This document shows, one piece after another, positions 18,001-57,500 of a DNA stretch of 64,000 nt. The DNA comes from Macrostomum lignano. Lineage: Eukaryota. Below the pieces are notes generated by a model. It ran no database searches and was not told where the DNA came from. It saw nothing but the letters and a program-made list of their open reading frames with translations. Every line of letters begins with the position of its first letter. The stretch's first letter is position 1. The stretch spans positions 25,673 through 89,672 of the forward strand of contig NIVC01002815.1 of assembly GCA_002269645.1 (NCBI GenBank), in the 5' to 3' direction. Both the position numbers and the translations under genes were made by a program.

Positions 18001-21000
18001 GACGCTTCTATGATTTTTTACATGACGCTTCTATGATTGTTTACATGACGCTTCTATGATTGTATACATGACGCTTCTATGATTGTTTACATGACGCTTC
18101 TATGATTTTTTACATTACGCTTCTATGATTTTTATATAACGCTTTTACGATTTTTTACATGGCGCTTCTATGATTGTTTACATGACACTTCTATGATTTT
18201 TTACATGACGCTTCTTTTTAAAAAGTCTTTTAGTTTTCCTGACGTTGAAAAGCTTTAATTAAAAAAATTATACTCTATGAAAATTCGAACCATCGTCGCT
18301 GCATTTGGCAGTTCAGTTTGTTCACCTCTAGGCTAGCTCTCATCGTTTTGATAACATCAAATTTTGCACTTATATAATTCAACACTTTAAAATCCAAGCA
18401 TAGAGTAAATCACACGAAGCAGTTATGACATAATCAGTTTCTCAGTCAGTCAGTATCAGTTAACAATATGGTTACGCAATTTAAATCAAGTCTGGTGCTA
18501 CGCTTCCACACTGCATTTTCAATTCAAGTCGGAGTTACAATTCAGTTATGATGCAATCTATTTCAGAATCAGAATTCAACCAGTCAGTTTTTTCTCTAGC
18601 ATTCTTACAATGCATTTCAAGTCGAAAAGTTTGCTTGACCTTTGCAAAAAAGCATGTTTTTCGAATATTTAATCACTTTAACATGGAGCAATTTCTTAGC
18701 CAAGATGCATGTACCGTCACCGGAAAATTTCTGATCGAACAGTGCAAGTCTCATGAAAATCGGTCCAGCCATTTTTTCTCTAATCGATTGCGTACAAACA
18801 AACAAACAAGCAAGATTTTCATTTTTAGTATATACGAGGCCAACTCCTCCGCTGGAGGAGAAAGGGGAAGAACTCCCATCACCGGAATTCCATTCCCTGA
18901 AATCCACCAACTGAATCCCATCATCCAACTCCTCACCGCAAAACTGAACACCATGGAAATCCTCTCCGCGAAACAGAAATCCTCTCCGTGAAACTGAACT
19001 CCAAGGAAATCCTCTGCGTGAAACTAAAATCCATCAAAATTGTCTCCGTAAAACAGAAATACATCAAAATTCTCTCCACGAAACAGAAATCGTCTCCGGG
19101 AAACTGAAAACCATCGAAATCCTCTCCGCAAGACAGAAATCCTCTCCAAGAAACTGAAAACCATTGAAATTCCCTCCGTGAAACTGGATTCAATCGAAAT
19201 TTTCTCCGTCAAAGGGAATAAACTCCAAGGATTCAATGGTTAGGGTTAGGGTTAGGGTTATGGTTAGAGCTACACACAGCAGCGTGTTGAAAGGCGCCGA
19301 TAAAAAAATTGAACCAATTGAATCAGTTGAATGCGCAACCAATTTCATAGTCATTCAGTATCAGTCTCGGTAAAATTAGGAAAAAAAATTGCGCAATCTA
19401 AATCAACCCTCCAATACACAGCGACCGACCCCTTCCAATACGCAGTGAAGGTTAGAAATTCAACCCCCCCCCTAACTGTTGGGGTGTCGGTCGAACCCCC
19501 ATTGAACCCGTAAAATGAGTACAATCTTTGCAGAGAGTTAAAAGTATTGAAATATCGTCTTTGCTTTTGCTTTGCTTTTTGCTTTCATATTTAAAGCAAA
19601 CAACTTATATCCTCGAAGTCAGCATTGAAAGATCTTTCCAGCAATATAAGTCTCTTCTCTCAGAGTTCAAAACTCGAGGAACAGTTGGCGTTTGAAATAT
19701 CCCAATTTAAAGCATTGAACTATCGAGTGTACGCATACGTGCACTGCCTGCTAAAAAGGCTTGCAAGTTTATTCATTGAATTCCACTGCCGCCCCAGCAC
19801 CCTCAACACAGGGGGGTTTGGTTAAGTTCTCAGTGCACACAGTTGTGGCGCAATCGCTAAAAATTGATGTCAACCGGCCCAGCTTACACCCCTTCAGTTG
19901 AAAGAATACACTGCACAGATAGGCCGGCTGTTGTGGCGCAATCATTGCAAATTACGCAAGATGTTCATATTCCCCTATTGTTCTACGATTTCTGCTTTTT
20001 TAGGGATCTTAAAATTTGAAAATAAAAAATTTAAATAGCCCACTGCCATCCTCGGAAAATTTGCAGTTTTCCCATATAAGTTTCAACGCTGACTTGCAAG
20101 TCGTCTAGGAGGAGATGTGTATCACACAAACAGACAAACAACGCACCAACTTTAGTATTAAGACGAGTGGAACTCCTCCGTTGGAGGAGAAATCCGCTGA
20201 ATTGAAATCCCCGGAATCCCATGGTTGGAATGTTGAATCTGCAGAACTCCATATCGTAACCCTAACCCTAGCTCTTGGGCCAGCGAAATTGAGCTACTGA
20301 AACGATCGCCTGCCCCCGTTGATGCATATGCATTGCGCCATCGCTGTCGCAGCCCGGTTCTCACAAATGTACACTGCATTTAGCCGAATTTATTCATTTA
20401 TGCCGGCCTTGTTACTTGCAAGCGTACAGTAAAGATCTACAGTACAGTCTATAGCCCATGCACCTCCCCCAAATGCACAGGGAGAGTCTAGGCTTGTGCA
20501 TTGCACAGTCAGAATTGAAATTAATGAAACCCCTCCCCAGCCACTTAACGTTTTCACAATTGAAATCAAGAAATTTTCTATGACAAATTGCTCTGATGCA
20601 GTTGAGATTTCGGAACAGAAAATTATACCATTCTGTTCAGTTTTTCAAACTCTTTCCAACGGTGTGATTCACTTTTCTGTAGCTTGAAAATTAAAAGCAG
20701 AAATTAAGGTGCAAGTTTTCCCGTTTCTTACTTGCAGAGCGCAATGTACACTCTGTGATGAGTTGAAAAATCAAGCCATCCATTCTCGCGCAGTGTGCAC
20801 CTCCACCCCTTTTTAACACTGAGCAAGTAGGCCGCCAATTCTCAAGTGCCGGCGACCCTCCCCCAGCTGAAATGAAATACACTGCAGAGATAGGAGAAAA
20901 GTTGTGGCGCAACCATACAAAATAGCGTCAAGTGGGATGGGAAGTCCATGGAATGCGATATATAGACATCTGGCTGTCTGGTTTGTGCTGTTTTCTGCTT

Positions 21001-22644: not shown

Positions 22645-23869
22645 TTTTCTAGCTGTGGTGGCTGTTAGCTGGTAACTGCAATCTTGTTATTATTATCATT
22701 CAGTAAGCCCTGTCTCTTAACTTATTATTCAATTTTCTTCCAAGTCAACATGACCTTCTCTTTCTATCCTAAATAATAATTGAGATCCAGTTAAGCCTCA
22801 ATATTGTTTTGTTTATCTAAAACGGATTTTAGCATTCACCTACCTGCTTAGCTTGTAATTTTATCAGAATTCCGGGTGATGAATTCTTTAGAGCAGCAGT
22901 TGATTTTCTGCGAGCGAAACTATTTCCCCTGATTTTATGTGTAACCTTGTTAATATCTGTTCATTACAATCGTATTTTAACTTGATCAGACCGCTAAGAT
23001 GCTGCGATGGATAAAGTTAGTGCGAAGGTGTTATTTACTTTTTAGTGTATGTGAAAAATGATTTTAACTTAGCACAAATATAAAACTGAAAAAAACCTCT
23101 CCTTCACATTCACTTGGGAGTTGAAGAAAACGAGAAAACGATTTGATTGATCTTAAACTTTTGTTGGTTTAAACTTGTTTCATTTTTGCTGGCATTTCAA
23201 GTTCTGTTTGCTGCCTAAAATTGTTTTCGAAATTGTTCGCTGCCATTTTCATAATCATTGATGCCTGTATGCCCTCCGTGTACATGTACCGTGGTTGAGC
23301 CAGTTACCCTAAAATATTGTAGCTCTTTAGCATTCAGTATGCATAAGCTCAAAATAATAATATAATAATTGATTACACCTGCCCTAATGGCCAGATGTGC
23401 AACCAACAGCTCAGCCTCAGCTGTATCTGAAGGCTGTGTACGGCTGTTCAGTCCAAGGACTGGGGGTCGCCACACACACCCTCAATTGTACCATGACCTT
23501 TGTGCCCGCTGGGCACTATTCTTGCCTTTTAATGCCATAGACTACATTTAAGCCCGCTTGCAGGAGTCAAACTTACTTTAATGCAAATTAGCGGGCAGTT
23601 AATGACATTAAACCCCCGATTATCTATGCCAAACTTACTTTAATGCAAATTAGCGGGCACGTAATGTCATTAACTGCCCGCTAATTTTGTCCCACTTTGT
23701 CAAGGACAAAAATGTCTAAAATGACACAGAGGGCGCCGTTAGGCGCCCGAGGATTTCTCATTAACGCCCGCAAAGCATGGGTATTACTATTATTGTGCCA
23801 TAGACATTTGGCATAATAACGGCGCCCTATGATTTTCCCATTAACGCCCTTAAAGCATGGGTATTAATG

Positions 23870-28806: not shown

Positions 28807-31800
28807 CTACATTTCTTCTGCACCAGCTACAGCAGCGGTTTCAACGTCATCCTGCTCAGATTTGTTGTCAGGCAATTTGGAGCTGACGTCACCCAGTTGA
28901 CAATTTTCCTCTGCATTTTCACTCGGCTGCTCAGCACAATTTCCGGTCGTGTTGCCGAAGCGGCGTTTAACTAGCAGATAGGCGGCCAGCAGCAGGGCGA
29001 AGTAAGGCAGCCTGGCCAGCATGGGGATGCCGTTAAACAGAATCCGAAGTCGCGTCCTGTCGTACAGCAGGCAGTTGCGTTCTCCAGCTGAGCCGCTGGT
29101 GGCTACCAGGCACGCGGATTCATAAATACGACCGCAGAAGCCGCCCATGATGGAGGCTGAAAGGTCATCAAGTGCTTTCAAGTGCTTTTGTTCAATTCAA
29201 TTTGATTCTTGTTCTTCATCGGAAGCCTAGGCGATTTTAGACACAGAATGGGGCTGAGGACGGGCCAGAATATTTGCGGTTCTAGGTTCTAGCGGGTCCT
29301 TGTTAAAGGGTACTTGTGCTTAGGCAAGTCACCTGTGTTGTAGAATGAATAAGCCAGTCAGTCTGCAAGTTTGTAGGCGAAACTCTCAAGCTCTCAAACT
29401 CTCCACGCTCTAACTTATGTATCATACGCTCGTATATTGTACTGCGATCGATAGCTAAGAGGTGTACACACAATTACGCACACGCATAGAGTAGCGATCG
29501 ACACAACAACCTGCTGTTGTCACATCGTACAGGACAAAACTTTGTTTGTGAGCGCGATTGTTAAGAAAAATGAATGCGAAATTTCTAACCAGTTGGTTGT
29601 AACTCTGACAATCAATGATGCGCCCAGACATCAATTGCGCTGGCGAATCCAGTGGGTTCCACTCGACATTTAGGGACATTAATTCCTGGGACCCTCTAAG
29701 CCATAGCCATAGGCAAGTCTCAATATGGAAGACTTGCACAATATGGTGTAAGTCTCAAAAATTTTCAAGTACCCGATGGGTTCAAGCATTTCACTACTCA
29801 TTAACATGCATCTGGGGTGCATGTTATTGCTTAGTTTTAGTCATTTGTGAAAAAATATTCATTGTCTATACCTCCAAAACCATATAGACAATCTACCAAT
29901 GATGCACGGACCATTGAGAAACAATGGTAGGTTGTGCATATGGTTTTGGTATATGGCTTCGCCACTCGTGAAGAATTAATCATTGTCTACCCCCAAAACT
30001 ATATGCACAGAAACATTGTCTCATGAATGTATGTTTAATAGCCTTGAATAATGATTTCGAAGCGTTGAATAACTAGCGTACGGCATGGGACATTGATGTT
30101 TGTCATGGAGACTTAAGAAAATAAGAAGAAAATAAAGCTTAGGACAGCTTTTTATGAGTTTTTGCATTACCCTCGTACTGTGCTTTTTTCACAAAAGTTT
30201 ATCCATAAAGTAAAAAAATATCGATAGGGTTGTATGTATGGAGCCTTCTATTCCTATAGTTTAGTTGAAAATATCTCAGCAATGCAATTAAGTATTACTA
30301 ATATGTTACCGGCAAGACTGAAGAACAGCGAGATAATCCCGACACCCATGGCCTCGTCGTCCTTTGAGTCTGTCACTCTAAAAATCGTACGGTTCCTCTT
30401 TTGATTATTGCCTAATAAATGCCACAGCATCAAATTTTTGCAACATGCGCACCTCATCACTAGTAAGAACCATGACACATACGACAGGCCGTCAACAAAA
30501 TGTGCGATGAATTTCAGCACGGAGAAGGCATAGACCATGTCGCATACACCGTAGCAACTGCCTGCCAGTGCAGTGCTGCTGACAAGGCCTTGTTCAGCGG
30601 AGTCCGTTAAACTGTAGTTTACAAATGCCTGTTCTAAACAGTTGCAGTTGCTAAACACCATCTCCGTAGGCTGGCATCGGAAATAAGTTATAATGAGTAA
30701 TTACTTAATAAAAGCAATTGATTAGCAGAAACAGATCTTCGATAATAACAAAAGAATTTGTACCTGGTGTGTCCCGTTCTCAGCAACTGCTACAGACATT
30801 GTCCCTGTACACCCAGCATGACACGGTGACATGTATAAGTTTCCATCAGCTCCGCACACTGGCAGATTGTTCAAGAGAGTGGCATCGCATCTGCACTTTG
30901 CAGCGCAGTCGGAGACGCTACTGACGTTGCTGTCCATTGTTTCTGTGAGGCTGTGACGGCGGTTATCGTCTTACGAGCTTTATGGAAATAAAGCCGTTTT
31001 GCACTTTTTGGCAAAAATGAATGCCGATGTACGAATCAACGAACGGTTAATGTTGCCTTTTTTATAAATACACATGGATATATGAAATGAGCCATAGGAT
31101 CAAAGTTCTAGACTCGATGATTTCACTAACTTTCCTTTAACGTACCTGGGATCATTCTTACGTGTACAGGTAGTGGGAACCAGTACCCTGCATGATTGAA
31201 AAATCTAGCGTGATTACGTTACACATCTACAGCGATGCATTGGTAACTTTGGATGGATACATCCAGCACAATACCTTGATATTTTAGCATGTGAATATAT
31301 CTGAGTGCACATCTTGTTCGGTGTTTTCTGAACGATGGCATTGAAATGCATTGACAAATCGATAGCACAAATAATCGAGATGAAAATATGTAATCTTACA
31401 CGTCCGTATTGATCCTTTCGGAGGGACAGTCCAGAAAGAATGCTGGCGAATTCAGTACGGTGGTCACCAGAAAGATACCACAGATGAGTCGCATCATTCC
31501 AACCACGTCAAGCTGCAAGCGCGACACCAAGTAGCCTCCAGCTAGTGTTGCCAGTGCGGTTGGCAGCGCATAGGTGATGCCAACGTACTGTCCTGCTGCC
31601 GAGGGCAATACGTTAAAGTAGTTCTCGTAGTACTTGACAATAAACAACACTTCGAGACCTGAACCGAGCAAACTGACCACGCAGGACAGCATGACCAGCA
31701 TGAGGATCGCATTGGTCATAGTGCGCTTCACGGCGAGTGACAAGTCGCGAAGACTGTGAAGGAATTTTGCGCAATTCCCGGCCCCGCGCGGCTGCGATTC

Positions 31801-32847
31801 GCACGACCTGTGGCGACTCATACGGCGCACTATATTTGCCTCGTTTAGCGGAGTCTCAGGATGAGAGGCGTCCGGATCGTCTTCAGCATCACAGGGATCG
31901 TCTTTCTGCTCATCCGGTCTTTCCGAGCAGCAGAACGCGTCTTCAAGTTGGCGGGGAAACAGCAGCATGGGAAAGCCAAGCAGGCTGGTAAGCAGGCCGA
32001 GACTGAGAAACCCCAGCCACCAGTTGCCAATCCACATGCTGTCGGATTCACGCAGACCAGATTCGCCAAATGATTCGTGCAGTGCTAAAAACTGCCCGAT
32101 CAAGTAATAGCCCAGCATTGGTGATATTGATCGAGCAGTGATGACCAGGCCGATGTAGATTGGCGACCGAGACGGGGTGGCTGAGTCCTCGACCATTGTG
32201 AATAGCACTGACCAAGAGGGGGCAGAAGCGGCGCCCTGAACGATCCCGACAATCATAAAGATGGCAAAGACTACTTTGCGGGCTTCAACTTGATTGGTCG
32301 CGGATGATTCCGATGTTGTTGAACCCAACCTCGGATACTTGTTTGACTCTGAGGATTTGTTGAACATGCCTGTTGAGTTCAAATCGAGGATTTTTCCACG
32401 GCACAATAGGTCGTTGTTTTCAGCAGCTAATGCTTTCAGCTGCTCGCTGTCGTTCTTCCAGCCGAGCTGTTGATCCGTGAGAGTCAAATAGCGTGCAATC
32501 TCGGCGTTCGAGTACTTCGGGCCGTAGATAAAATATGGAAGTGCGTAGGCAGCCGTGGACAGACCCATAACAACTGCGCCCAGGCCCAAAATGCGAGGCC
32601 TGTGACCTCGGTTGCCATAGAAACTAACTAGCGTCACAGTTGCAGCGAAGCCAATATCATTCGCCACTATGATTCGCCCCGTGTCCTCTGAATCGAAACC
32701 AAAGCGCCGCTCCAGAGTTGTCGTCATGCTCGATAAAAACACGTAGGATGCGTTGTAGGCGATGCCTGCTGAGATGCTGACTAACAGAAAGCACAGCAAC
32801 GACCGAATTTGTCCGGCGCTTCTGAAACTGCTTTCGATTTCTGACAT
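28807..32847 (-). CDS. SLCO: Organic anion transporting polypeptide (OATP/SLCO family), ~756 aa, 5 exons
   Basis: Exons 32847-31400, 30950-30764, 30670-30453, 30377-30310 and 29156-28807 have matching phases and total 2271 nt. Motifs: TTLERRFGFDSEDTG, SFYGNRGHRPR, WIGNWWLGF, Kazal-like PVCGADGNLYMSPCHAGC and CLLYD. Confidence 0.92.
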
Positions 32848-33760: not shown

Positions 33761-35204
33761 TCACAACATATACCTATACGTTATTCTTTTCAAAGCTGTC
33801 TACTCTTAGTAAGCTTAGTACTCATCAGCTTCTCAAAGAAAGCAATGAATTATTAAGCATTTATACGGAAGGCAAGACATAAAAGAAATACAGAAGAGGA
33901 TTAAAAAGTTGAGAAAGTTGAGACGCGTTCAAAAAGTTGATAGCAATAGGAGAATGGAAGTTAATTGAAAAGTCACTACGTATTTTTCGATTAGCAAGAT
34001 TGTCTGTTTTAGGTTTTAGGTGGAGATTCAGGGGCTGTTAAATCTACCCAGAAGAAACCTTGGCCTGTGACGCAACCTAACGAGCACGTGGCTAAAATTT
34101 AAGCAGATCAAACGTTCAGGTAGCTAATTAGTCAACTTACTGCAATAAATTATGCATGTCAGGTCATAAATGCAGCCCAGCAACTCTGCAACAATAGCAA
34201 GCAGGCTTTCATCGTTTCAGACCACGCCCATTTGTCCCACGAGCTCTAAATAGAATGGCACACCTTGCACGACAACATTCTCACGGGAACACATTTGAGT
34301 TCGGCTAATTTAGCTTAATCCTTTCGGATGAGAAAATTTTATGGCAAAACGCACAGCCTATCTGAGATAATTATAGCGTTGAGCGCATCATAGTCACAGT
34401 AAAAATGCAGTAGTCGAGTCTCACTGCCTTGCCTAACCAACGTATTACTAATTTTTACCTTGATATTACCTTGATAATAATAGAATGAATGCAGATTTTC
34501 CTGCCGAATACATGCGCAGTCAGGAGATTCCATCTCTAAATTTATTAGAGTAGATTGAGCCAACAATATGCGAATTTTGATGGAGCCATGAATAGATAGG
34601 AGAAACCTGCCCATTCAATATTGAAGTTTTGCTTCTGAAGTGTGCCTGTGTGTCAACTCTCTCACGACACAAAGCAAAATGAGTAAATGAACAGCGACCC
34701 ACCTCAGAATTCTGTCTAGAATTATGTAAAAATAAACATGCCAGTGAGAAGCTGCGATAGAGGCAGATAGTTGTGAAGCTCATGTAGTTAAGAGGGCGGA
34801 CTGTTGAGACAGAAATTTGAGCACAGATGTCGTGGGTCGTGGAAGAGTATTAGACACCCTCATTGGCAGTCATATTCAGGTGCTTTCATTGTTAAATTTC
34901 AGTTGTGGGCTTGTAATATTCGTTTTTTAATGCTCATTTAATCTATTGTGCATTGCACACACACTGCTCTAGTGAGTGCTCTACTGCCCTGTGCTTTTGT
35001 CCTCCGCATCAGTAAATTATTATAAGGACTGGCGTCGCGAGTCTGGGTGAGTTTTTTTATATACACTCCACTTGTTAGCAATAAAATCTGTTGAAAAAAG
35101 CGAGAACATACTGGCTCAGATTAATATCACTCTAGAGATGCAAACGGCGGGTAAGCAGCATTTTCATACCAAAAAATAAAGCTGAGCAAAATTAAATTAC
35201 TACA

Positions 35205-35532
35205 GACGGGGTCAAAACACCGCTATTAGAATGCAGGACCCCGATCGGAAAACTTGCATCATTACTATACTGACGGGGCCAGAACACCGCTATTAGAATG
35301 CAGAACCCCGATCGGAAAACTTGCATCATTACTATACTGACGGGGCCAGAACACCGCTATTAGAATGCAGGACCCCGATCGGAAAACTTGCATCATTACT
35401 ATACTGACGGGGCCAGAACACCGCTATTAGAATGCAGGACCCCGATCGGAAAACTTGCATCATTACTATACTGACGGGGCCAGAACACCGCTATTAGAAT
35501 GCAGAACCCGATCGGAAAACTTGCATCATTAC
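35205..35532. repeat. 67-bp tandem repeat, ~5 copies
   Basis: Units start at 35205, 35272, 35339, 35406 and 35473 and are nearly identical. Confidence 0.97.
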
Positions 35533-36178: not shown

Positions 36179-39100
36179 ATGAAAGCTTTTAGTGTTCGGT
36201 TGTTGTTGTTGTTGCTGCTTCTGCTGGCAGTATGGGAAAGCAGGGCATGCTACCTAAATTTGGCGATGAGCGGCAGCGGTAGCAGAGGCAGCGGCGTCTC
36301 AAAAAGTATCGAAGATTTGGCAGAGTCTTCTCCGATTGTGCTCACTGGACATGTGCTCAATACAACCGCGAGTGGCTCAGGCAGTGGCTCAAGGAGAAGC
36401 TACTCAGCCGAAATTCAAGTGCTCGAGGTGCTGAAGGGTAATGGATTGTTGCCCCTTAGCAACCGAAGCGCCTTTGATGATACCAATGATCACACAGTGG
36501 TGATTGACGAATACGGAGATCCAGTTAGCTGCTTGAGCGAAGTTTTTCAAGATGACTGGTTGATATTTTTCCTGTCAAAGTCGGGCTCCAGGCTCATGGC
36601 TTTTTATGCCAGACCATCTGCCGCGACAGCCCAGTTGACAGAATCGAATTTGGCAAGAGCTGCGACGGCCTTGGGTGAGCGATTCCGAGATCACTGCTTT
36701 ATTGCACAGTTGAAGCAAAGACTATATGTTAACTATAACTCATTATAGACTGCTGAGCGACATTTTACCCTTCATTAATGAGCTCAGTAAGAAAAAAACA
36801 TGGGAATTTTCTCCCCCACAATTCAGGCTGGTTCAGCTGGTCAAGTTGGACGGCCTGCAGCGGCAGCTGCGGCCTCGCTGGCATCAGACAGAGAGTCAGA
36901 AATTGCGCCGGACCGCCTTGCGACTACGGGGACGCCAAACAGACTCGTCAGTGCAATAGGTGGCCTTGCGAAGGTGAGAATTCCGCTCCGTTTGGACTCA
37001 CCGATTACAGGAATAAAGAGAAAATGTTTTACAGTAAAGACATTCTAAATGCAAACCTTGTTTTTAAAACCTCTAACAGGTAACCTTTGTTGCCATTGAT
37101 ATGGGAATCTAATATGGAGTTCGTCGGAGGGAATTTCCGGACCATGTTTCTCTAAACAGAAAATTTCATTATTCTACAGCAGGGGTCTTCAAACTCCGGC
37201 CCTTGGGCCACATGCGGCTGGCAAAGCGTCTCTGGTCCTTTGAAACTGCACGGATAACAATCCGCTGCCATCATAAGGCTTGTGTCTCTATCCGTGCTCA
37301 TCTCAGATCTCAGATCTCAGAATCTCAGCTTTCCAGTAAAGTCGCCTCTTTTCGCTTTTCTTCTCTCTCCCCTGCTATTCTTCTTTCCTCTCTCCTCTTC
37401 TCTCCGCTCCTCTTCTCTCTTCAGTACTCAGTCCTCCTTTTCTCTCATCTCTCTTCTCTAATCTTCTCTCCTTTCTTTCCTATATTCTCTTCTATTTAAT
37501 ATCTCGTCTCGTCTCGTCTCCTCTCATTTATTCTCTCGCCTCTCCTTTCTCCTTTCTCTCCTCTCTCTTCTTTATTCCTTCTCTGTCTGGCCAACAGTCA
37601 TGCTCTGGGTTTTCGATCTGGTCCTTGAGGTTAAAAAGTTTGCCGACCCAAAGCTCTACAGTATTGGGTTTCCAGCCTATATGCTCGCAGCTGTTGGAAA
37701 GAAAAAGTATATAATATAGCTCGCATAGTTACAAATACAATACAATATATTGTAATATTTAATACATGTTCAAAGGACAAAAGTCTAGCTCCACGCAAAA
37801 TTCTAAAAAATTAAAATTCTGAAAATTTTCTTTCAACTTTCGGTATTCCCACAAAAATTGGGCAGTCAACATTAAAAAATTAAATTCCAAAATTCAAACA
37901 AAAAACCGCCTTGAAGACCAAGATATCAAGCACCCATGCCTCCATGGGCTGAAACAGATTTTTAATTTATTAAGAGCCAAAGACATTTGGCCTTCAGGAC
38001 GTCCATATTGTCTTATTTTAAACAGAAAAACCAAACTCAACCTTTTCGTTGGATTTGCCTGTAGAAAAAGGTTTTATAGGTAACCTGCTGGTTGTTGTGT
38101 TTGCTGTACGCTCGTAGTGGTTCCTTTCAGAGTCAAAGTCGGACCACTGCATTCCTATACTCAAAACTGAAAATGAGACAAAAATGTAGAACTGAATTGA
38201 AGAAACAATCTGTTCTACTGCATATAAAATTCGTAGCATATTAACTTTAATTTTTATTTTGACAGCTTAATTAAATTTGTCAATGGCAGCAATAGAAAAG
38301 TGAAGGTTTAAAATTCTGGATTTTCAGCCATGCGACCAGTTAAGACAGAAGTTCTCGGTGAACAGCTGAATGCTAAAAATACAAGCAATGAGTCAATTGC
38401 CATTCCAATCGATAATCAACGCATCGAAAAATTCTCCAAGGAGACGGCTCTGGCATTGATGATATCTCCGATTTTGTCTGGTATTCGAGTCGCCATGGAA
38501 ACTGTTGCTGAAGATCACGTCTCAGTCCTCACCATGACGTCTGCCTCGAGCATGTGGAGAGATATTTCAACGGCTCCATCAGTTGCAATTTATTTGCGAA
38601 TAATTGCAAATGAAAGCGAAGGCAGCTTTGCTGAATTCTCAATCGAATGCCTGTCCTCTGGTAGCGTGCCAGTTCCCGGTGCTGGTTCGAAGTTCATTTT
38701 GACACCTAGAAAGGTACGTTTTAAACGATAACTGGTTTGCATATACTAATGAGAGTTGAATACAAAATAACAAATAAGCAAAATAACTGCAGGCTCTTCT
38801 AAGTGCGAATTTTGTGCCATGGTCCGAGGCAACAGACTGTTCCGAGGAACAAAAAGTGGTAGGTCATCGATTTGAATTCTTGCGTTTTGACAGAGAAAAA
38901 TATTATAATTGAAGTTCCAATATGCATTTGCAGGGGCATGAAAGGAGTACATGTATGCCTGTATTTATTAACAGCTTCGATATTTAATTTATCTTGACAA
39001 TCAGCTGTCTCGTTGCAATGACAGTTTCTAATGCAGAATAAACGTTAATAACGGGGGGGGGGCGCAGCCTGCGGTCTAACGCGGCGCGCTCCTATGTGCT

Positions 39101-42100
39101 AGCGGCCTGGGCTGGGTTTCATGTTCAGTCACATTAATTTGGGGCTTGGGTCTGCTCGTGCTAATACCGCCCTTGAGGGCCAACCATCAAGGCACAGTGA
39201 AGTGTACATACCTAAGGATAAAATACCTAAGGTTAGGGCCGCTGTACACTCCTGTGTGAGTGTGCCTGTGCGTATGACTGGCGTACGTACGTAAACGGTA
39301 CTATCATCTCCTGGAAATTTCCAATCCAGAATTCAAGTGCACCCTATGCCACAGTTTAGATTAGCAGACCATAAATTGGCCTGCGAAACAATGAGGACTG
39401 CGAGACCAAAGATCGCTTTCGAGAATAGGACCTGCCCAAAGTGCCATATGAAAGTGAAGTTCACGTCCCGTTGAAGTGTAGTTGGAACGTTTATAATGCT
39501 CCCCGTGATAAATTCGTTTGAAGAACACACAGTGCTTTCGACTTTCAGCAGTCTCTTGAAAAAATCAAACTAACGATCACCTATCTTGCTAATCAACCCC
39601 CAAGGGACAGAGTTCACATGCCTAAAGATGAGAATTTCAGGGCACTGTACACTCAGTGTGAGCGTTGTGTGACCTGCGTGCGCCTTTGTGGGCATGAGCG
39701 GATGCTCAGGGATGAGAAAAATGGGCATAAATTTTTGATCTCCTTGCTGGCTGCCTGTCGAATGTCGTCTTGTTTTTTGCGTAGTGCCCAAAGCGAAGCG
39801 AAATAATTGAGCCTGAACTGTCTCGTTAAACAGACTCCGCCTCAACCTACTGGACCGCCTGGAGCTCCTGCAGCGCCACCTGCGGCGAAGGCATTCGCAG
39901 CCGCACACTCTTTGTGCCGTGGCAACTCACCAGCCGACAGCTGCCATCCTGCCGGGTCCCGCCCGCCAGTCGAGTCGCCGACCCTGTCCCAGCCTGCCGC
40001 TATGCAATCCTGACCACAGCGCCGGATCTGCCGCCGGTTGCAGCTTCCTGTCTCAACGGCGATTCTGCTACAAATCTCGCTGCATCTGCCCCATCTTCGT
40101 ACACCGGTGACCGCTGCCAGACGGTCCTGTCAGAGCAGCCGGTGCCACACGCAGCCGAAACTTCCATTACGACGGCTTCTCCTCCGAGGCGTCGATGGAA
40201 ATTCGACTGCCGGCGTCGGGCGTACGGTAGGGGACGCCGTAGGCGCAAAGCGCAACTGTTTGCCGCAACGGGAGTCTGCGACCCGCGCACTGGCGTGACT
40301 GGTCGCTGTCCGATGGGTTGGTCCGGGCGTCGATGTCGGAAGCCGTTGTGCCGACCGCAGTGCCGAAACGGTGGAGCTTGCGTCGGCCCAAACCTGTGTG
40401 CATGCGCTGCCGGATTTTCGGGCACCCAGTGCCAGACAGGTTGGTCCGCCTCTGGCTACTTTCTAGATGAACTTTTTGCATCTTAAAGTCGAATTTGAAA
40501 GATCCTCATTCATGGAAAATGCCTAGTTAGTATTGAGCGTCTTTACCGCTGTCATTGCGCGACGCATACGAGAGCTGTGTAGAATTTGCTCAGTCGCAAC
40601 TCTATCTGCATTTCTACCGAGCTCTCGTATGTCTCGTGTGCGTGCGTCAGAGAACTATCATAGAACTGGAACTCTTCATAGTTTATCCCTCGCATACGTT
40701 GGCTGCTTTGAGGGGTGACACAAGCGGCTTCTGTGTTGCGTACTTACCGCATCCAACTTTGCTTACATTCCAATTGCGGGCGTCGAATGCCTAATATAGC
40801 ATGTATTAAATAAGATTTATTTATTTTTATTTTAAGAATAAGACTTTTTTCAGACTGCAGTTCACATGCCACTTTCACCCGCTTCAGCGGACTGCTACCC
40901 ACCCTGCGTGAACGGCGGCACCTGCATTCGCCCCGGCAAATGCTCCTGCCCACCTGGCTATCGCGGTCGGTTCTGTCATCGGGTTCGCTGCCACCGCAGC
41001 CTCTGCTTGAACGGTGGGCGCTGTATCGAATCCGACGGTCTCTGCAGGTGTCGGGCTGGCTTTTACGGAGCCAGATGTGAACGACGGTGAGTGGCGACCG
41101 GATGAGCTTATGTGGGCTGGAATGGAGTGGAGTGGATTGGTGCGGATTGGTGCGGAGTGGAATTGAATTGAGGGGAATAGAGTGGAGGAAAGGGGGAGGA
41201 TTGGAGGAGAGGGGAAGGATTGGAGTAGAGGGGAAGGATTGGAGGAGAGGGGAAGGATTGGAGGAGAGGGGAAGGACTGGAGGAGAGGGGAGAGAATTGG
41301 AGGAGAGGGGAAGGATTGGAGGAGAGGGGAAGGATTGGAGGAGAGGGGAGAGGATTGGAGGAGAGGGGAGAGGATTGGAGGAGAGGGGAGAGGATTGGAG
41401 GAGAGGGAAAGGATTGGAGGAGAGGGGAGAGGATTGGAGGAGAGGGAAAGGATTGGAGGAGAGGGGAAGGATTGGAGGAGAGGGGAAGGATTGGAGGAGA
41501 GGGGAAGGATCGGAGGAGAGGGGAAGGATTGGAGTAGAGGGGAAGGATCGGAGGAGAGGGGAAGGATCGGAGGAGAGGGGAAGGATTGGAGGAGAGGGGA
41601 AGGATTGGAGGAGAGGGGAAGGATTGGAGGAGAGGGGAGAGGATTGGAGGAGAGGGGAAGGATTGGAGGAGAGGGGAAGGATTGGAGGAGAGGGGAGGGG
41701 AGGGGAGTGGAGTGAAATGGAATTAAATAAAAAAGAGAGGACTGGACTGGATTATTGGAGTGAAGGGGTAGGAAAGGGAAGCGGTGGAGTAGAGAGAAGT
41801 GAAGTGGAATGGAGGGGAGAAGACTGGATTGGAGTGGAGGGATGGGAAGAGAATGGAAAGGAGAGAGAGGAGCGGACTGAACTGGATTGAATTGGAGTGG
41901 GTGGAGTAGAATGGAGATTCGCGTGTATTGGTGCTGCATATATTACAGTGGATAGTGTTGCATTAGTCTAGACAAAATAATTGCTGAGTTGGGTGAAGTG
42001 GAGGTAAGTTAAATAAAAAATTGAATGGAAAATGAGAAATGGCTTGAGTTAGATGTGAAATCTATTAAGCTTCAGCGGACCCGTGAGGCTAAACTTTGTC

Positions 42101-42315
42101 TTGACACAATCAACAACAATCGTGACTTCTCCAGAAACTGCACTCCGGAGCTGAGCTACCGAAAGACCTACAGGCCGGTGGTGAAGCGACTTCGCAAGCC
42201 CACGGTGCAGCCCTGCTCGCCCGGCTCAAAGCGCTACTGCCTGCTGAACAGCCTCTCAAAAGTTGTTGTTTTTAAAATCATACTCAGACCGTATTTCACC
42301 TGCTCGTCCACTTAA
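36179..42315 (+). CDS. Secreted mosaic protein: signal peptide-NtA(agrin-like)-TSP1-unknown-CUB-like-TSP1-5xEGF-EMI-like (~778 aa; contains apparent indels and one stop)
   Basis: Exons 36179-36674, 36827-36973, 38328-38713, 38793-38858 (tentative), 39429-39657, 39834-40439, 40861-41086 and 42135-42315 are phase-compatible. NtA-like PIVLTGHV..YSAEIQVLEVLKG..GDPVSC; TSP1 WSSWTACSGSCG and WTAWSSCSATCGEG; EGF CRNGGACVGPNLCAC. An in-frame TGA lies at 39519 and local frameshifts affect the first two EGFs. Confidence 0.72.
37180..37653. mobile_element. hAT-type MITE with CT-rich interior
   Basis: Left TIR CAGGGGTC and degenerate right end GACCCAAAG. Flanks TTCTACAG and CTCTACAG match at 7 of 8 positions (8-bp TSD). 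Same family as 54081-54306. Confidence 0.75.
39060..39280 (+). mobile_element. SINE-like element, family B
   Basis: Shares CAAGGCACAG..AGTGTACAT and GCTGTACACTCCTGTGTGAGTGTG with the other two copies. Confidence 0.5.
41185..41710. repeat. Purine-rich 19-bp minisatellite (GGATTGGAGGAGAGGGGAA)n, intronic
   Basis: Visible tandem units flanked by degenerate GGAGT/GGAAT repeats. Confidence 0.95.
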
Positions 42316-43275: not shown

Positions 43276-44718
43276 TTACAATCGAAACAGCAGCAATTCA
43301 TGAGCGGCCGCATCGCAAACTGCCAGAATCCGACCATCACCAGTTCCACAGCAGCAAACGGCTGTTGGATAACGCAACGAGATTCGAGACACAGGGCGCA
43401 TCTGTTTGTCGAACAATCGAACGCTGTTCTCGCTTGCTACCGCAAGCCACACGCTGTCCCGGCACTGGCTTCTGGCGACCACTTCAGTCGCGTCTGCCGC
43501 GTAGAACAGCCCACCGGGCCCGAAGCAATCTGCCTCGGCCCACTCGTGTCCAACTCGGCGACTTGTTTGGCTCACCAGCTTTAGCTGACCCCCATGACGA
43601 AGCCAAAGTAATCTTGGCGTGGCATGGAGAGCCCACGACTCCTGCGGTAGCTGCAATCGTTGCAAAACTCGCAGGCTGGTTCGATCCAGCAGAACAACCA
43701 CCTGAGGAACGTGCCTGGTAGTAGATGCTTTGGACCCGCCGTGGAACACTACAATATATTTCGAATCTGCTTCTATTCGAGCATCTTCTTCGTAGCATCG
43801 ATCTTTGTCAAGTTCTGAGGCTTCGTCACTGGATGGGTCCGGTGAGTTTGGTTGCTCAGTGCCGTGAAAAAAATCTTTGAGCTCTGCCGACTGCAGGCAG
43901 GCACCATCTAAGCCACACTGTCTGACACAAAGCCGTCTTTGAGTAGCTGTCAGCATGAAGAGTTGCGGAGCAGCCGGACAAGCTGTTATTCGGAGAGGCC
44001 TTTCGTTCAGTTTGCTACCTCCAGTGTGAGACATCAGCAGAAAACGCTTCGAGTACTTATGTTGGGCCGGGTGTGGGCAGAAAGCAATCCTACCAGTGCA
44101 AACACTTCGTCGACGGGACTCCCTAGGAGTCATCAAGACGGCCACACAGGAGCCTGGCAAGGGCCGGGGCTCAATGCGGGTCGTTGATGCACTAGTCTCA
44201 AAAATGCTTCCTCCAGCATCGCTTTCGTAGCCCTCAGTGCATTCTACGTGACAGGCTGATATGGCAACGAAGCCGTCAACTGCTGACTGGACCAGAGAGA
44301 CTCGCGCCACCAGTTTCGATTCAGGCATTTTGCTATCTGACAGAGCTGCAGCTCCAACTGAATCTCGCAGGCCATCCGTCAAGTGACTTTTTAAATGCTC
44401 AGTCCAGTTCAGCAGAAGTCTCTGCTGATTTGGCGAGATCGATGATGATGATGCAAGACATCGAATTTCTCTTACCCGCGATCTCGCCTGTGAAAGAGCG
44501 GCTTCCGCTGCATCCAGCACTGCTCCATCGATACTGAATATCTGCGCGGTGGGTGCCTCCCCAGCCACTGGAGACTCATCGGAGACATCGTCTTTGTCTT
44601 TCATCTCATTTGCCTTCAACATTAAATACGAATTGAGATATTTTGCTGCAGATCTTGTAAAATACTTATAGTCAGTCTCGTATAACGCTTCTCTCGCCTT
44701 AATTTGAAATCTTAGCAA
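43276..44718 (-). CDS. Intronless ~450-480 aa hypothetical protein, possible C-terminal NHL/beta-propeller-like region
   Basis: A 1443-nt open frame with GC-rich coding-like composition in AT-rich flanks. The C-terminus VAVASENSVRLFD..PTAVCCCGTGDGRILAVCD resembles NHL blades. The start codon is uncertain (first ATG at MLKANEMKD). Confidence 0.6.
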   Translation of the reverse strand: MLRFQIKAREALYETDYKYFTRSAAKYLNSYLMLKANEMKDKDDVSDESPVAGEAPTAQIFSIDGAVLDAAEAALSQARSRVREIRCLASSSSISPNQQRLLLNWTEHLKSHLTDGLRDSVGAAALSDSKMPESKLVARVSLVQSAVDGFVAISACHVECTEGYESDAGGSIFETSASTTRIEPRPLPGSCVAVLMTPRESRRRSVCTGRIAFCPHPAQHKYSKRFLLMSHTGGSKLNERPLRITACPAAPQLFMLTATQRRLCVRQCGLDGACLQSAELKDFFHGTEQPNSPDPSSDEASELDKDRCYEEDARIEADSKYIVVFHGGSKASTTRHVPQVVVLLDRTSLRVLQRLQLPQESWALHATPRLLWLRHGGQLKLVSQTSRRVGHEWAEADCFGPGGLFYAADATEVVARSQCRDSVWLAVASENSVRLFDKQMRPVSRISLRYPTAVCCCGTGDGRILAVCDAAAHELLLFRL

Positions 44719-49752: not shown

Positions 49753-50004
49753 CTTGAATTCAAATTGTATGCTGAAGAGAGTTTATTAGACAAGCTTTTT
49801 AATGAATAACTAAGCTATCCACTTAATTTATGTCATGTATAGATAAAATTGAGCTATCAGCAAAAATCTTTTTCAGCAAAAAGCCCTTTCTCAGTTCAAA
49901 GCCAAGCAATGTGTCTGTGGCCAAAATTGAATCAGTAAATCGTTAACTAAGTCCACTTGCAAGACTAGGATACTTTTTCCTACTGCAAGACGAAGCTTCA
50001 TGTA

Positions 50005-50615
50005 TACTGTCCGTCAAAAGTTCCGGAACCCTTGCTACGATGTCTTCTAGCGGACATAATTTCAGTCCGTTTCAATTGTAACTTGATTCAAATGAAAGCT
50101 GCGGATCTCAGCTCCATGATGTGGTCAAGAAAAAGTTTATTCGAAGGAGCGCGTGTGAACAGGCCAGTGTTATGTACATAAAGGTTAGAGAAAAAAAAAA
50201 GTGAGGAAAAGACAAACAAGCTATTGTCTATGGTTGCTGAGTCTATGGAGCAAACACACATGGGAAGGAATCGGTTTGCGCGCAGTGTTCAGCCTGGCTA
50301 ACATTAGTCTATGGCCAAAACTTGTGTTGAAATCAACAGGCTCTTATGGATTCTTGTGCAGTCAGCTTTCATGGGAGAGTAAAAAAGAGTAAAAAACAAT
50401 TGCTTGTTTGTCTTTTCCTCACTTTTTTTCTCTAACCTTTATGTACATAACACTGGCCTGTTCACACGGGCTCCTTCGAATAAACTTTTTCTTGACCACA
50501 TCATGGAGCTGAGATCCGCAGCTTTCATTTGAATCAAGTTACAATTGAAACGGACTGAAATTATGTCCGCTAGAAGACATCGTAGCAAGGGTTCCGGAAC
50601 TTTTGACGGACAGTA
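50005..50615. mobile_element. Tc1/mariner-type MITE with ~220-bp TIRs and TA TSD
   Basis: TA|TACTGTCCGTCAAAAGTTCCGGAAC ... GTTCCGGAACTTTTGACGGACAGTA|TA. The arms 50005-~50226 and ~50397-50615 are near-perfect reverse complements. Confidence 0.92.
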
Positions 50616-51299
50616 TAGTAGATAAAAATTCTTTTTCGGCCCTGGGGATTTATACAAATTGCTCCCTCAAAAGGCACGTTCATCTCATATAAAACATAGG
50701 CTTAAAGATTTTACGGGATACTATTGAATACTTCCAAATAAAACAGAGCGGAAATAATTTTTTGAAAGTCATTTTCTATGTTTTTTTTTAATTTAACTTT
50801 AATTTAAATAGAAAATGGCAGTTTCCGTCTAGGCAAAATTGCTTGACGGCAGAATTCAGGGTGATAAACGGGCTCAGCTTTTGGCTTTATATTGTCTCCT
50901 TGGCTGTATGGCTTTTGGCTTATGGCTTATATGACTTGGCTTATATTTGGCTGTTTGCAGTTTCTGCCATAGGCATTTAATGTGGCTGACTGCTAGATTT
51001 GGCTAATCTGCCAGAAATGAACGCACTCTTGCAAAAACCGAAGTTGAAATTTGAAGCTGAAGTTGAAGTTGAAACAAGTACAGCTATGTCGAGCGGATTA
51101 ATTAGAGAGGACAATATGAACACTAGAATGGTTGAGCACCTGTGTGTGAATATTTTCTGCAGAAATACCTTGTGTTTTTCGTATTTAGTAGACTTAATTT
51201 ATTCGTGCATTTTTTGGCCAACTTATTGATAATGCATCGTGCAATAAGAGGCCGTAAAGACGGTCTCTTACTGCGAAGACTCAATTTATTGGATGTCTT

Positions 51300-54572: not shown

Positions 54573-57500
54573 TCACTGCAGAAGTGAAATACAAAATATG
54601 CTAAACAGTTTGGCAAGGTGGATCAACAACCCAACAGTCTGACGAGCGGCACTTGACGAGAGACATGGTGGTTCCAGATGGATGCCATTCAACGATAGCC
54701 GCGGCGGCTGCAGAAGTTTCGACACTGATGGGGAACAGTTAGAATATTTTGAGCACAGCTGAGCGCACGGAGGGCACACTAAACTGCCATAGTACAGGCT
54801 GTAGTTCCCAGCTAAAGAAAAATCCACTTTGCCGCCACCAACTGGACAGGCGAATTCTCTACCACCAGCCAAGGTGACAATCGGCGCGCCGCCGGTTGCT
54901 GGGGGCACCGAACAGGATAGCAACCGCTGCCGTATGTGGCGGCCGCGTGCCTGCGACCACAGAACTGCAATTGGAATGGCTCAGGCTGGATGAGGCATAC
55001 GGATTTCGATCCGAACAGCTCCATGCCGGGATTAGCCGATTTCACTGGCTGATTGCCAATTCGAAAACAGTCAGAATTGCGATCAGTGGATTTGCTCAAG
55101 GTAGTGTAGGCCTGAGGATAAGGACAATAGTCGGCAAAGCGACTCGTACCACCGTAGCGAGTAAAGGATTCTGAGCTTAGAAGTTTCACACCTCCCGGAG
55201 ATAGACCAGCCTGCTGAATGTTGACATCGCCGCCAAAGTACTGATACTCCAGCGGTAGTTCATTAGACAGCTCATCCAGATTGCAGTACCGCTTGGAGCG
55301 GCGATCATCGGAGCAGCCAGTGCGAAGCATGGCGTCTCCCCGAGGCCCAGTATGCTTCGGTGCCAAATTGCAGTAAGGCCAGGCCGATTGATGATGCGAC
55401 ACCATCCAGTCGTAGCAGCTATTGTAGACAAACTTGCAGCCTAGATTGCGACCCCAGGCAATTGGCTGAGCCGTTGAATAGTTTGCAGAGTACCTGCAAT
55501 GAGTGATGCAATAATGAAATCGATTAAGGCAAAGCTTTTTTGATCGGAGAAGGAAAAATGACAGTAATGAAATCGCGTTGATTGCGTCAAAAACTACTCG
55601 AGATTGCACAGTTTTAGAAACAAGTCAAAATTATATAGATCTTTCTTATACATGCCTTTTTCTAACCGGATCTTCAAGGTATGTACTGTGCAGTTTTGAT
55701 AGGACTTTAAACGCTAAAGAGCGCGTCATTGACATGGGTTCATGATCCCAGTGAAGACGAATAAATTAAAAATAGAAAAATTGTGAGGGTCAGGGTCATA
55801 TGAAGTTGGCACATAGACATAACTAATCCTACACGCTACTCCGAGGAAATCTGCCATAGACATTTTTCGTGATTCCATAGCGACGCCTGATAGAATACAC
55901 AGTTTTTCTCTTTACGTCCAGCCATCGCGAAATGTGCTCAGCACTATCACCTCTCTCGATGGCAGCAGCGACAATCAGGTCGTACTTTTCGTTGCTTATC
56001 TTGCGATAGGGTTCTTGCCCTGCAGGATTCTGCTCATCCACTGCATCTTGGGCTGTAGCAAAACTTTCGTCACTGCTCTGCTCGCTAAATTCTTCGTCTG
56101 CCATATCTATGTCTGTCTAATGAAATCTGTTCTTTACTATGGTTTAAGGCTTGCACAACTATGGAAAGGATTAATTGCGCGCCAGAATTCTCAAATTGGT
56201 TGCTCCACAGACCCCCTTCGGGCCATAGACGATGAAAAGCAAGTCTTCAATAGCTTGATTTTCCCACTAAGGATTAAATTGCTTGCTCCTAGGCTCAATT
56301 GGCTTGAAAAATGCTATAGTAGATCAGTAGAAGAGTTAGTTTTTTTACTAAAAATATTCGTTTTGTATTTCTCACCAGCCGGTATCTTCTAAGAAGGCAA
56401 GTGTGAACTCCGAAACAACAGACGAGCCCGTATATGCGGCGGTCATGAGTTCGCTTTCCAAAAGACGCTTCTCCCAGTGAGTCAGCGCCGAGCCCAGTTT
56501 GCCCTGATTCTCCAGTGGTAAGCCGGGCATTTTGGGACAGTTAAAGTGCGCCCGCACTAACGAAACGAGGCGAGGCGTGACTACGTAGTGTCTGGTTAGG
56601 TTGTAAACACCTCGTGCGGAACGCCAAGGCTCTTTGGTCTGCAATGAATTCGTAAATTCGCTCAGCAGAATGTTTCTATTAGACTTAGGCTTGGTATTTT
56701 TTTGAAAAAAGCACTGCAGTTTTATGGTATCTACGAGCGTACGAGTAACAGTAGAAATACCAAGCACCAAACTACATTTAAACCAGTGAGTTTTATTTAA
56801 GATCTTAAGGACGCATGTTTAGATATTTTTTTCTTTTTTGCTTTACAGGTATTAAATGAGATTAAACAGTAGCACGATCGATACAATTCGACTATGCACT
56901 ACTTATCAGGTAGCTTGTGAAAATCCATTGCTCTGATTTCAAGTTGTGTTTTCAGCCCAATCAAAAATCAAAACAGCAACTCTCAGAGAAATATTTAAGA
57001 TGATAATTAAATATTCGTACATTAAAATACAGAGATTTCATAGGAATTATCCTTTTGTAGCCCGATAGTTAGTCCGCTACGCTTCTAGAACGACGCAGAA
57101 TCATTGACATTGAGTTAATCCTTACGCCGTTTGTTAAGGCAAAGCTTTTTTGATCGGAGGGGAGCGTACAATTAATGGAAAACTTAGTAACGGACTTCAA
57201 TAAGTAAGTCACAGGTATACCTGAATAACGGTATCGTTGCCCCACTGATACAGTGTTACTCCGTCGTCCTCAATTAATCCCAACGCAGGCATATTAGTAG
57301 CGGGATTGCGCGGAGTTCTCGGGACGCCGTTGTCTTGGCGCATAAATGCGAATAGGGTAGCCGTGACACCCAGAGCGTGAAGCAGTTCGTGCCTAGCTGT
57401 GTACTGAGCCTCCGCCTGAGTTGTGGAGACATGCGAAAGTATAGCAAACTGCATTGACTCTGTGTCCGCAGATAATTATTGCACGTAGGTCTCTAGCAGC

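What the first reader, a model, noticed from the sequence alone, without database searches (positions are those of the whole stretch)
36179..42315. Novel extracellular mosaic: agrin-type NtA domain on a TSP1-CUB-EGF-EMI-like scaffold
NtA is best known as the laminin-binding N-terminus of agrin, where follistatin/Kazal repeats follow. Here it is followed by TSP1, an unassigned ~150-aa region, a short CUB-like segment (CSWNV..FV*RTHSAFDF..NFRALY), a second TSP1, five EGFs and a terminal Cys module (CTPELSYRKTY..PCSPGSKRYC..YFTC) like that ending VWDE-type proteins. I know of no described protein with this order. It could be a basement-membrane-anchored signalling, regeneration or adhesion factor.
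Basis: partly seen in the sequence, partly recalled or inferred. Interest (0 to 1): 0.7.

Follow-up and report, generated by a model that had tools for sequence, protein, structure and literature searches.

The report
Flatworm NtA-TSP1-EGF matrix gene, copy garbled
The window holds a copy of an uncharacterised Macrostomum lignano gene for a secreted matrix protein that joins an agrin-type NtA domain to thrombospondin and EGF repeats. The combination is unusual but already deposited, and this copy's largest exon is scrambled by a patch of 1-2-base indels that looks like an assembly error.

Summary
The gene is real. Window 36179-42315 (+) is about 99% identical in DNA to GenBank contig NIVC01002816.1 (Macrostomum lignano). 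That contig's seven-exon gene encodes PAA55049.1 / A0A267E2J4, "hypothetical protein Mlig010866g2", 693 aa. Its layout is signal peptide, NtA (Pfam above threshold; the only significant PDB hits are agrin), TSP1, about 150 unassigned aa, TSP1, five tenascin/teneurin-type EGFs, and a 59-aa four-Cys tail with no family match.

Two points are wrong. The "CUB-like" segment (39429-39657) is intronic: it has an in-frame TGA, no Pfam hit, and no conserved reading frame in the other copy. The real exon there is a 22-aa micro-exon (38793-38858). No EMI profile match supports the tail.

In this window exon 5 (39834-40439) differs from the intact copy by 12 indels of 1-2 nt and no substitutions. This forces ten frame changes and a stop at 40011. 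It lies in a 1.25-kb indel-only patch (about 20 indels, 2 substitutions). I read this as a local assembly error; a real pseudogene copy is less likely.

No paper mentions the gene and no orthologue was found. Function is inferred only, as a laminin-anchored matricellular protein. Modest novelty.

The parts
36179..36674 (+). Exon 1. Signal peptide at 36179-36247 (MKAFSVRL9AVWESRA). Agrin-type NtA domain, with the Pfam match at about 36302-36598.
   Evidence: Pfam NtA 37.8 bits against GA 25.1. Agrin NtA entries are the only PDB hits with E below 0.01. The donor is GTGAGC. The exon is identical to P0003 except H104R.
36827..36973 (+). Exon 2: TSP1 repeat 1 (WFSWSSWTACSGSCG...RWPCE).
   Evidence: Pfam TSP_1 28.3 bits against GA 21.6. 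AG/GT sites and phase are conserved with L001.
38328..38713 (+). Exon 3: 128 aa, unassigned, with one Cys and three N-glycosylation sequons.
   Evidence: No Pfam hit at E<=10. No significant PDB hit. AF2 single-sequence model has pLDDT 31. 100% identical to P0003.
38793..38858 (+). Exon 4: 22-aa micro-exon (ALLSANFVPWSEATDCSEEQKV).
   Evidence: tblastn of P0003. Sites are cag|GCT and GTG|gtaggt. It is used in the L001 CDS that reproduces P0003.
39429..39657 (+). It is intronic, not coding.
   Evidence: In-frame TGA at 39519-21. No Pfam hit. Absent from P0003. In L001 the reading is split over three frames and keeps the same stop.
39834..40439 (+). Exon 5: TSP1 repeat 2, EGF1, a Pro/Arg-rich insert (RGRRRRK), EGF2 and EGF3. 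In this window it is disrupted by 12 indels of 1-2 nt (net -1). Only 40304-40439 (end of EGF2 plus EGF3) stays in frame with the N-terminal half of the TSP1.
   Evidence: Exon length is 606 nt here against 607 nt in L001. There are 12 indels and no substitutions against L001. Every peptide piece of P0003 is found 100% identical, but in alternating frames. The frame-hopped TSP1 gives a full-length Pfam match, 3-49/49 at 34.1 bits, against 3-32/49 in frame.
39052..40301 (.). Indel-only patch relative to the sister locus. Probably a local consensus or assembly error.
   Evidence: 2 substitutions against 21 indels in the three 500-nt bins 39000-40499 that hold the patch. Elsewhere outside the three excluded repeat bins the counts are 79 against 28, Fisher p = 6e-9. 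Indel rate is 14 per kb against 1.1 per kb.
40888..41086 (+). Exon 6: EGF4 (40893-40976) and EGF5 (40989-41078).
   Evidence: Pfam EGF_2 44.1 bits and EGF 37.5 bits. Exon ends taken from the P0003/L001 splice model; domain coordinates. Two aa differ from P0003.
41170..41696 (.). 19-bp G-rich tandem repeat (27 copies) inside intron 6. It creates long spurious ORFs on both strands.
   Evidence: TRF. ORF list.
42135..42315 (+). Exon 7: 59-aa C-terminal tail with four Cys (NCTPELSYRKTY...YFTCSST), then TAA.
   Evidence: 100% identical to P0003 residues 634-693. No Pfam or PDB hit.

Best explanation
The locus is a copy of the Macrostomum lignano gene family Mlig010866. Its sister copy is GenBank PAA55049.1, UniProt A0A267E2J4.

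The intact gene has seven exons and encodes a 693-aa secreted modular matrix protein:
- a signal peptide;
- an agrin-type NtA (OB-fold) domain;
- TSP1;
- about 150 aa of unassigned sequence;
- TSP1;
- five tenascin/teneurin-type EGF repeats, the second with an Arg-rich insert;
- a four-Cys tail.

Inferred mechanism, not shown here: the NtA domain tethers the protein to a matrix partner. By analogy with agrin this would be the laminin coiled coil of basement membranes. The TSP1 and EGF array would then act as a displayed binding scaffold. The RGRRRRK stretch is a possible furin-type cleavage site.

In this window the large exon 5 is scrambled by 12 indels of 1-2 nt, inside a 1.25-kb patch of indel-only differences. 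The most likely cause is a local long-read consensus error, so the underlying genomic copy is probably intact.
For: - A full-length search found P0003 at 83% identity and 100% coverage, from M. lignano.
- Window 26284-53095 aligns to L001 (NIVC01002816.1) at 98-99.6%.
- The L001 CDS built from the shared splice sites equals P0003 exactly. All exon lengths are the same in the window except exon 5, 606 against 607 nt.
- Pfam on P0003 gives NtA 34.7 bits (GA 25.1), two TSP_1 matches, five EGF_2 matches and EGF_TEN 105 bits.
- The NtA matches PDB agrin entries; the only other hit was non-significant (E = 0.85).
- Exon 5 shows 12 indels and no substitutions. All peptide pieces are 100% identical to P0003 but in alternating frames.
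- Patch statistics give p = 6e-9.
- Other long ORFs in the window are intact, including the 1024-aa pol and the 483-aa OATP. The error is therefore local.
Against: - No RNA data or sequencing reads were available. Neither transcription nor the true sequence of 39052-40301 was verified.
- The two copies do differ in real ways: substitutions, a 612-bp foldback insertion, and repeat copy number. A genuinely damaged duplicate is therefore possible.
- No protein for the window's own copy is in the collection.
- The laminin-binding function is pure analogy.
- The AF2 model of the NtA is low confidence, pLDDT 44, with no significant fold match.
- No orthologue outside M. lignano was found.
Confidence: 0.7

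Rival explanations
1. The window's copy is a genuine, recently inactivated duplicate (a pseudogene) of Mlig010866. The exon 5 frameshifts are real mutations in a redundant paralogue of a genome rich in duplicates.
For: With the annotated splicing the reading frame breaks at 39842 and stops at 40011-13. The copies differ by real structural changes, a 612-bp foldback element and the 67-bp repeat number. No annotated protein for this copy is in the database.
Against: Exon 5 has 12 indels and no substitutions, and 100% amino-acid identity in every piece. The patch also covers intron sequence and has 14 indels per kb against 1.1 per kb elsewhere, p = 6e-9. Natural decay gives far more substitutions than indels. 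All 12 splice sites and every other exon are intact.
Confidence: 0.2
2. The GenBank model is a chimera. The NtA/TSP1 exons and the TSP1/EGF exons belong to separate transcripts, so no NtA-EGF mosaic protein exists.
For: No transcript evidence was examined here. Introns 2 and 6 are over 1 kb. Only one species carries the model.
Against: All seven exons share one strand with canonical GT-AG sites and compatible phases, and give an uninterrupted 693-codon CDS in L001. Only exon 1 carries a signal peptide. The region is bounded by minus-strand genes at 32847 and 43276.
Confidence: 0.07
3. One reading: exon 3, then the 'CUB-like' exon, then exon 5 translated in frame 1. This would give a variant protein with a Cys-poor linker in place of half a TSP1 and two EGFs.
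For: GT-AG sites and phases can be made consistent, and frame 1 of exon 5 is open over 202 codons.
Against: It requires reading through a TGA at 39519. The segment has no Pfam hit, and its frame is not conserved in L001. The frame-1 stretch is simply out-of-frame TSP1 and EGF sequence.
Confidence: 0.03

Closest known systems
PAA55049.1 / UniProt A0A267E2J4 (hypothetical protein BOX15_Mlig010866g2, Macrostomum lignano)
   Same: Same gene family and locus type. DNA is about 99% identical. Exons 1-4, 6 and 7 are 95.6-100% identical in protein. The splice sites are identical.
   Different: The window copy has 12 indels in exon 5, 3 amino-acid substitutions elsewhere, and no annotated protein. The deposited protein is itself uncharacterised.
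Agrin (NtA domain, PF03146; PDB 1JB3, 8S9P)
   Same: N-terminal position directly after the signal peptide. Pfam NtA is above the gathering score. Conserved blocks are VLTG, YSxxxxVxxxLKG and V(V/I)IxxxGDPxxC...(I/L)FF.
   Different: No follistatin/Kazal, SEA, laminin-EGF or LamG modules. The Cys of agrin's 'YSC' is Ala here. The C-terminal helix does not align. Identity is only about 28%.
TSP1- and EGF-repeat matricellular proteins (thrombospondins, tenascin/teneurin-type EGF arrays, WIF-1-type EGFs)
   Same: TSP1 repeats with WxxW and CSxTCG motifs. Five 'CxxxCxNGGxCxxxxxCxCxxGFxGxxC' EGFs that score best against EGF_TEN, 105 bits.
   Different: No TSPN, type-3 repeat, fibrinogen, FN3, teneurin core, WIF or VWD domain was detected. 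The domain order is not that of any of these families.

Membership tests
NtA domain (Pfam PF03146) | Profile score above the curated gathering threshold | tested here: met
   37.8 bits for the window and 34.7 bits for P0003, against 25.1. PDB phmmer hits with E below 0.01 are agrin NtA only.
NtA domain (Pfam PF03146) | OB-fold barrel flanked by N- and C-terminal helices | tested here: inconclusive
   AF2 single-sequence model has pLDDT 44. The order of secondary-structure elements is compatible. The Foldseek list has no hit at E<=0.001, though NTR and TIMP OB folds are among the top hits.
NtA domain (Pfam PF03146) | Laminin gamma-1 coiled-coil binding through the C-terminal helix | not testable with these tools
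   The C-terminal 25 aa lie outside the Pfam and PDB alignments. A binding assay is needed.
Agrin | Follistatin/Kazal repeats after the NtA | tested here: not met
   No Kazal or FOLN hit on P0003 at E<=10.
Agrin | SEA domain and C-terminal LamG/EGF cassette | tested here: not met
   No SEA or Laminin_G hit.
TSP1 repeat (PF00090) | Full-length profile match with six Cys | tested here: met
   Repeat 1 scores 28.3 bits. Repeat 2 is full length in P0003, residues 372-422 matching 3-49/49. In the window repeat 2 is full length only after frame hopping.
EGF-like repeats | Six-Cys EGF profile matches, five in tandem | tested here: met
   Five EGF_2 stretches in P0003. Three are intact and in frame in the window.
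CUB domain | Profile match to PF00431 in an expressed exon | tested here: not met
   No hit at E<=5. The segment has an in-frame stop, is not in the annotated CDS, and its frame is not conserved in L001.
EMI domain | Profile match, and the CC-x-G-W/Y motif near the C-terminal end | tested here: not met
   No Pfam hit at E<=10. The tail ends after its fourth Cys, and only the Cys spacing (C-x26-C-x8-C-x22-C) is reminiscent.
Thrombospondin / VWDE / WIF-1 families | TSPN plus type-3 repeats plus TSP_C; a VWD domain; a WIF domain | tested here: not met
   None of these profiles hit P0003 at E<=10.

The most novel reading that the evidence does not exclude
The NtA module, described in the papers read here only as part of agrin (called unique to agrin within its own gene family), has been shuffled in a flatworm lineage onto a TSP1/EGF scaffold. 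The result would be a lineage-specific, laminin-anchored matricellular protein: a non-agrin NtA protein with its own biological role, for example in basement-membrane organisation or regeneration in Macrostomum.
Probability: 0.3. Interest if true: 0.5.

Novelty: new variant of a known kind. Interest (0 to 1): 0.3.

Why it matters
If the protein is expressed as annotated, it shows that the agrin NtA module can work outside agrin. It would also give a small, tractable protein for testing what NtA binds in an invertebrate basement membrane, in a flatworm that tolerates RNAi and transgenesis.

In practical terms, the finding is a warning. This window's exon 5 is corrupted by a local indel patch. 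Reading exons by eye there produced a spurious 'CUB-like' exon and an out-of-frame linker.

Tried and rejected
- A homology search with exons 1-3 found nothing. It was swamped by low-complexity words.
- A search with a neighbouring leishmanolysin exon found nothing.
- An exhaustive phmmer of the NtA against 1.84e9 representatives returned two repeat-protein hits that I judged spurious. It did not even return P0003, so that negative result is weak.
- Exact look-ups of window ORFs found nothing.
- My first splice model used the CUB-like exon and a different exon 6 acceptor. It was phase-consistent but turned out to be a coincidence once P0003 was found.
- I considered a 33-nt mini-intron or an alternative acceptor at 39549 to avoid the TGA. 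Both were dropped for the same reason.
- AF2 single-sequence models of the unassigned region (pLDDT 31) and of the NtA (pLDDT 44) were too poor for fold assignment.
- PDB sequence searches of the unassigned region and of the tail gave nothing significant. A Dscam Ig hit at E = 0.5 is only a lead that exons 3-4 might end in an Ig-like fold.
- Rfam and tRNA scans of the window were empty.
- A metagenome scan found no relatives.
- Literature searches for the gene and protein identifiers, and for NtA with TSP1 or flatworm, found nothing relevant.

Full report
**What the window is.** The window is eukaryotic. It has introns, a Ty3/gypsy-type gag-pol element and interstitial CCCTAA repeats. A full-length conceptual protein of the finding recovered one strong database hit. 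The hit is P0003, 693 aa, 83% identity over 100% of the query. It is PAA55049.1 / UniProt A0A267E2J4, [quoted passage not shown]. Its locus is contig NIVC01002816.1 of GCA_002269645.1, fetched as L001. L001 aligns to window 26284-53095 at 98-99.6% nucleotide identity. The window is therefore M. lignano DNA. It is either a near-identical second copy or haplotype of this locus, or the same locus from another assembly.

**Gene structure.** Using the splice sites shared by both sequences, the L001 CDS reproduces P0003 residue for residue. The homologous window exons are:
- E1 36179-36674
- E2 36827-36973
- E3 38328-38713
- E4 38793-38858
- E5 39834-40439
- E6 40888-41086
- E7 42135-42315

All sites are canonical GT-AG. 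All exon lengths equal those of L001 except E5, which is 606 nt against 607 nt.

**Domains.**
- Exon 1 encodes a classic signal peptide and an NtA domain. Pfam gives 37.8 bits against a gathering score of 25.1 and 34.7 bits for P0003.
- A phmmer search of PDB returns agrin NtA entries as the only hits with E below 0.01 (E 7.5e-4 to 2e-3). The conserved blocks VLTG, YS..V...LKG and VVI..(F/Y)GDP..C...(I/L)FF align.
- Exon 2 is a TSP1 repeat.
- Exons 3-4, about 150 aa, hit nothing in Pfam or PDB.
- In the intact copy, exon 5 holds a full TSP1, EGF1, a Pro/Arg-rich insert (RRRAYGRGRRRRK), EGF2 and EGF3.
- Exon 6 holds EGF4 and EGF5.
- Exon 7 is a 59-aa four-Cys tail with no family match.
- On P0003, Pfam shows five EGF_2 stretches, EGF_TEN at 105 bits and two TSP_1 matches. 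Nothing matches Kazal, SEA, LamG, CUB, EMI, VWD or WIF, even at E<=10.

The "short CUB-like segment" (39429-39657) is not an exon.
- It contains an in-frame TGA at 39519-21.
- It has no Pfam hit at E<=5.
- It is absent from P0003.
- In L001 its reading is split over three frames and keeps the same stop.

I was at first misled too. A model using it is phase-consistent, but only because the window lacks one C at 39842, which shifts the TSP1 into another frame. The true exon 4 is the 22-aa micro-exon at 38793-38858. The EMI/VWDE-like idea for the tail rests only on Cys spacing.

**State of this copy.** Against L001, exon 5 of the window carries 12 indels of 1-2 nt and no substitutions. Every peptide segment of P0003's exon 5 is present at 100% identity, but in alternating frames: f2, f1, f2, f0, f1, f0, f1, f2, f1, f0, f1.
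- With the annotated splicing, the frame breaks at 39842 and stops at 40011-13.
- A frame-hopped translation restores a full-length TSP_1 match, 3-49/49 at 34.1 bits, against 3-32/49 in frame. It also restores an EGF signal that the in-frame translation lacks.

The indels belong to a 1.25-kb patch, 39052-40301, which also covers intron sequence.
- The three 500-nt bins that hold the patch have 21 indels and 2 substitutions.
- The rest of the 27-kb alignment, outside tandem repeats, has 28 indels and 79 substitutions. Fisher p = 6e-9, and the rates are 14 against 1.1 indels per kb.
- Other long ORFs in the window are intact.

An indel-only, substitution-free cluster with perfectly conserved peptide pieces is what a locally unpolished long-read consensus looks like. 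It is not what pseudogene decay looks like. I put about 0.75-0.8 on artefact and about 0.2 on a real inactivated duplicate. The two sequences do differ in real ways: scattered substitutions, three amino-acid changes, a 612-bp foldback element and the 67-bp repeat copy number. They are therefore probably distinct genomic copies.

**Mechanism (inferred).** The product is a secreted, Cys-rich, N-glycosylated modular matrix protein. By analogy with agrin, whose NtA anchors it to the laminin coiled coil, the NtA here most likely tethers the TSP1/EGF array to a matrix partner, probably basement-membrane laminin. The TSP1 and EGF repeats would serve as a binding scaffold. The RGRRRRK insert is a candidate proprotein-convertase site.

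None of this is tested. The AF2 models were too poor to judge.

**Novelty.** The papers found describe NtA only in the context of agrin. One calls it unique to agrin within the agrin/perlecan/pikachurin family, and another lists it among Pfam domains exclusive to ECM proteins in the human proteome (PMC3927612, PMC4224354). No paper in the library mentions this gene or its accessions. No orthologue was detected outside M. lignano. The other hits share only a TSP1, and the metagenome scan was empty.

These searches have limits. The word prefilter misses distant relatives. The exhaustive NtA search failed to return even P0003, so its negative result is weak.

The protein is already deposited with automatic NtA, TSP1 and EGF annotation. 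The finding is therefore an uncharacterised, apparently lineage-restricted new arrangement of known matrix modules. It is not a new kind of system. Interest is modest, 0.3.

Noticed in passing
window 50003-50617: A 612-bp foldback or MITE-like element, with arms of 195 nt (extending to about 230 nt with a second pair) that are 99% complementary. It is present in the window but absent from the otherwise 99% identical locus L001, where positions 23571 and 23572 are adjacent. This is an insertion polymorphism between the two copies.
   Followed up: partly
window 10191-14047: An apparently intact Ty3/gypsy-type retrotransposon. It has a gag-like ORF (250 aa) and a 1024-aa pol with protease, RT, RNase H and integrase domains.
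   Followed up: partly
window 15660-16107 and 16918-18215: Interstitial telomere-like (CCCTAA)n arrays, followed by a 23-bp satellite of about 58 copies with a 91-bp higher-order period.
   Followed up: no
window 35201-35532: A 67-bp tandem repeat of 5 copies, about 650 bp upstream of the gene's ATG. L001 carries about 122 nt more here, roughly two more units. It also produces repeated small ORFs on the minus strand.
   Followed up: no
window 41170-41696: A 19-bp G-rich tandem repeat (27 copies) in intron 6. It causes the strong GC skew of 40-42 kb and long spurious ORFs, 351 aa on the minus strand and 267 aa on the plus strand.
   Followed up: partly
window 31396-32847 (-): A 483-aa open exon of an OATP/SLCO-type organic anion transporter (Pfam OATP 267 bits). 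It is the upstream neighbour, on the opposite strand.
   Followed up: partly
window 54812-56770 (-), possibly to about 59000: Exons of a leishmanolysin-like (peptidase M8) gene.
   Followed up: partly
window 43276-44718 (-): A 480-aa ORF immediately downstream on the opposite strand, with no Pfam hit. Function unknown.
   Followed up: no
window 61276-62423: A 31/62/93-bp satellite array with about 18 copies of the 62-bp unit.
   Followed up: no
P0003 (database record): The precomputed domain list for P0003 includes PF25961.1. My own Pfam scans did not reproduce this, even at E<=10. Separately, the exhaustive representative search with the NtA did not return P0003, although it is 99% identical over the query.
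   Followed up: partly
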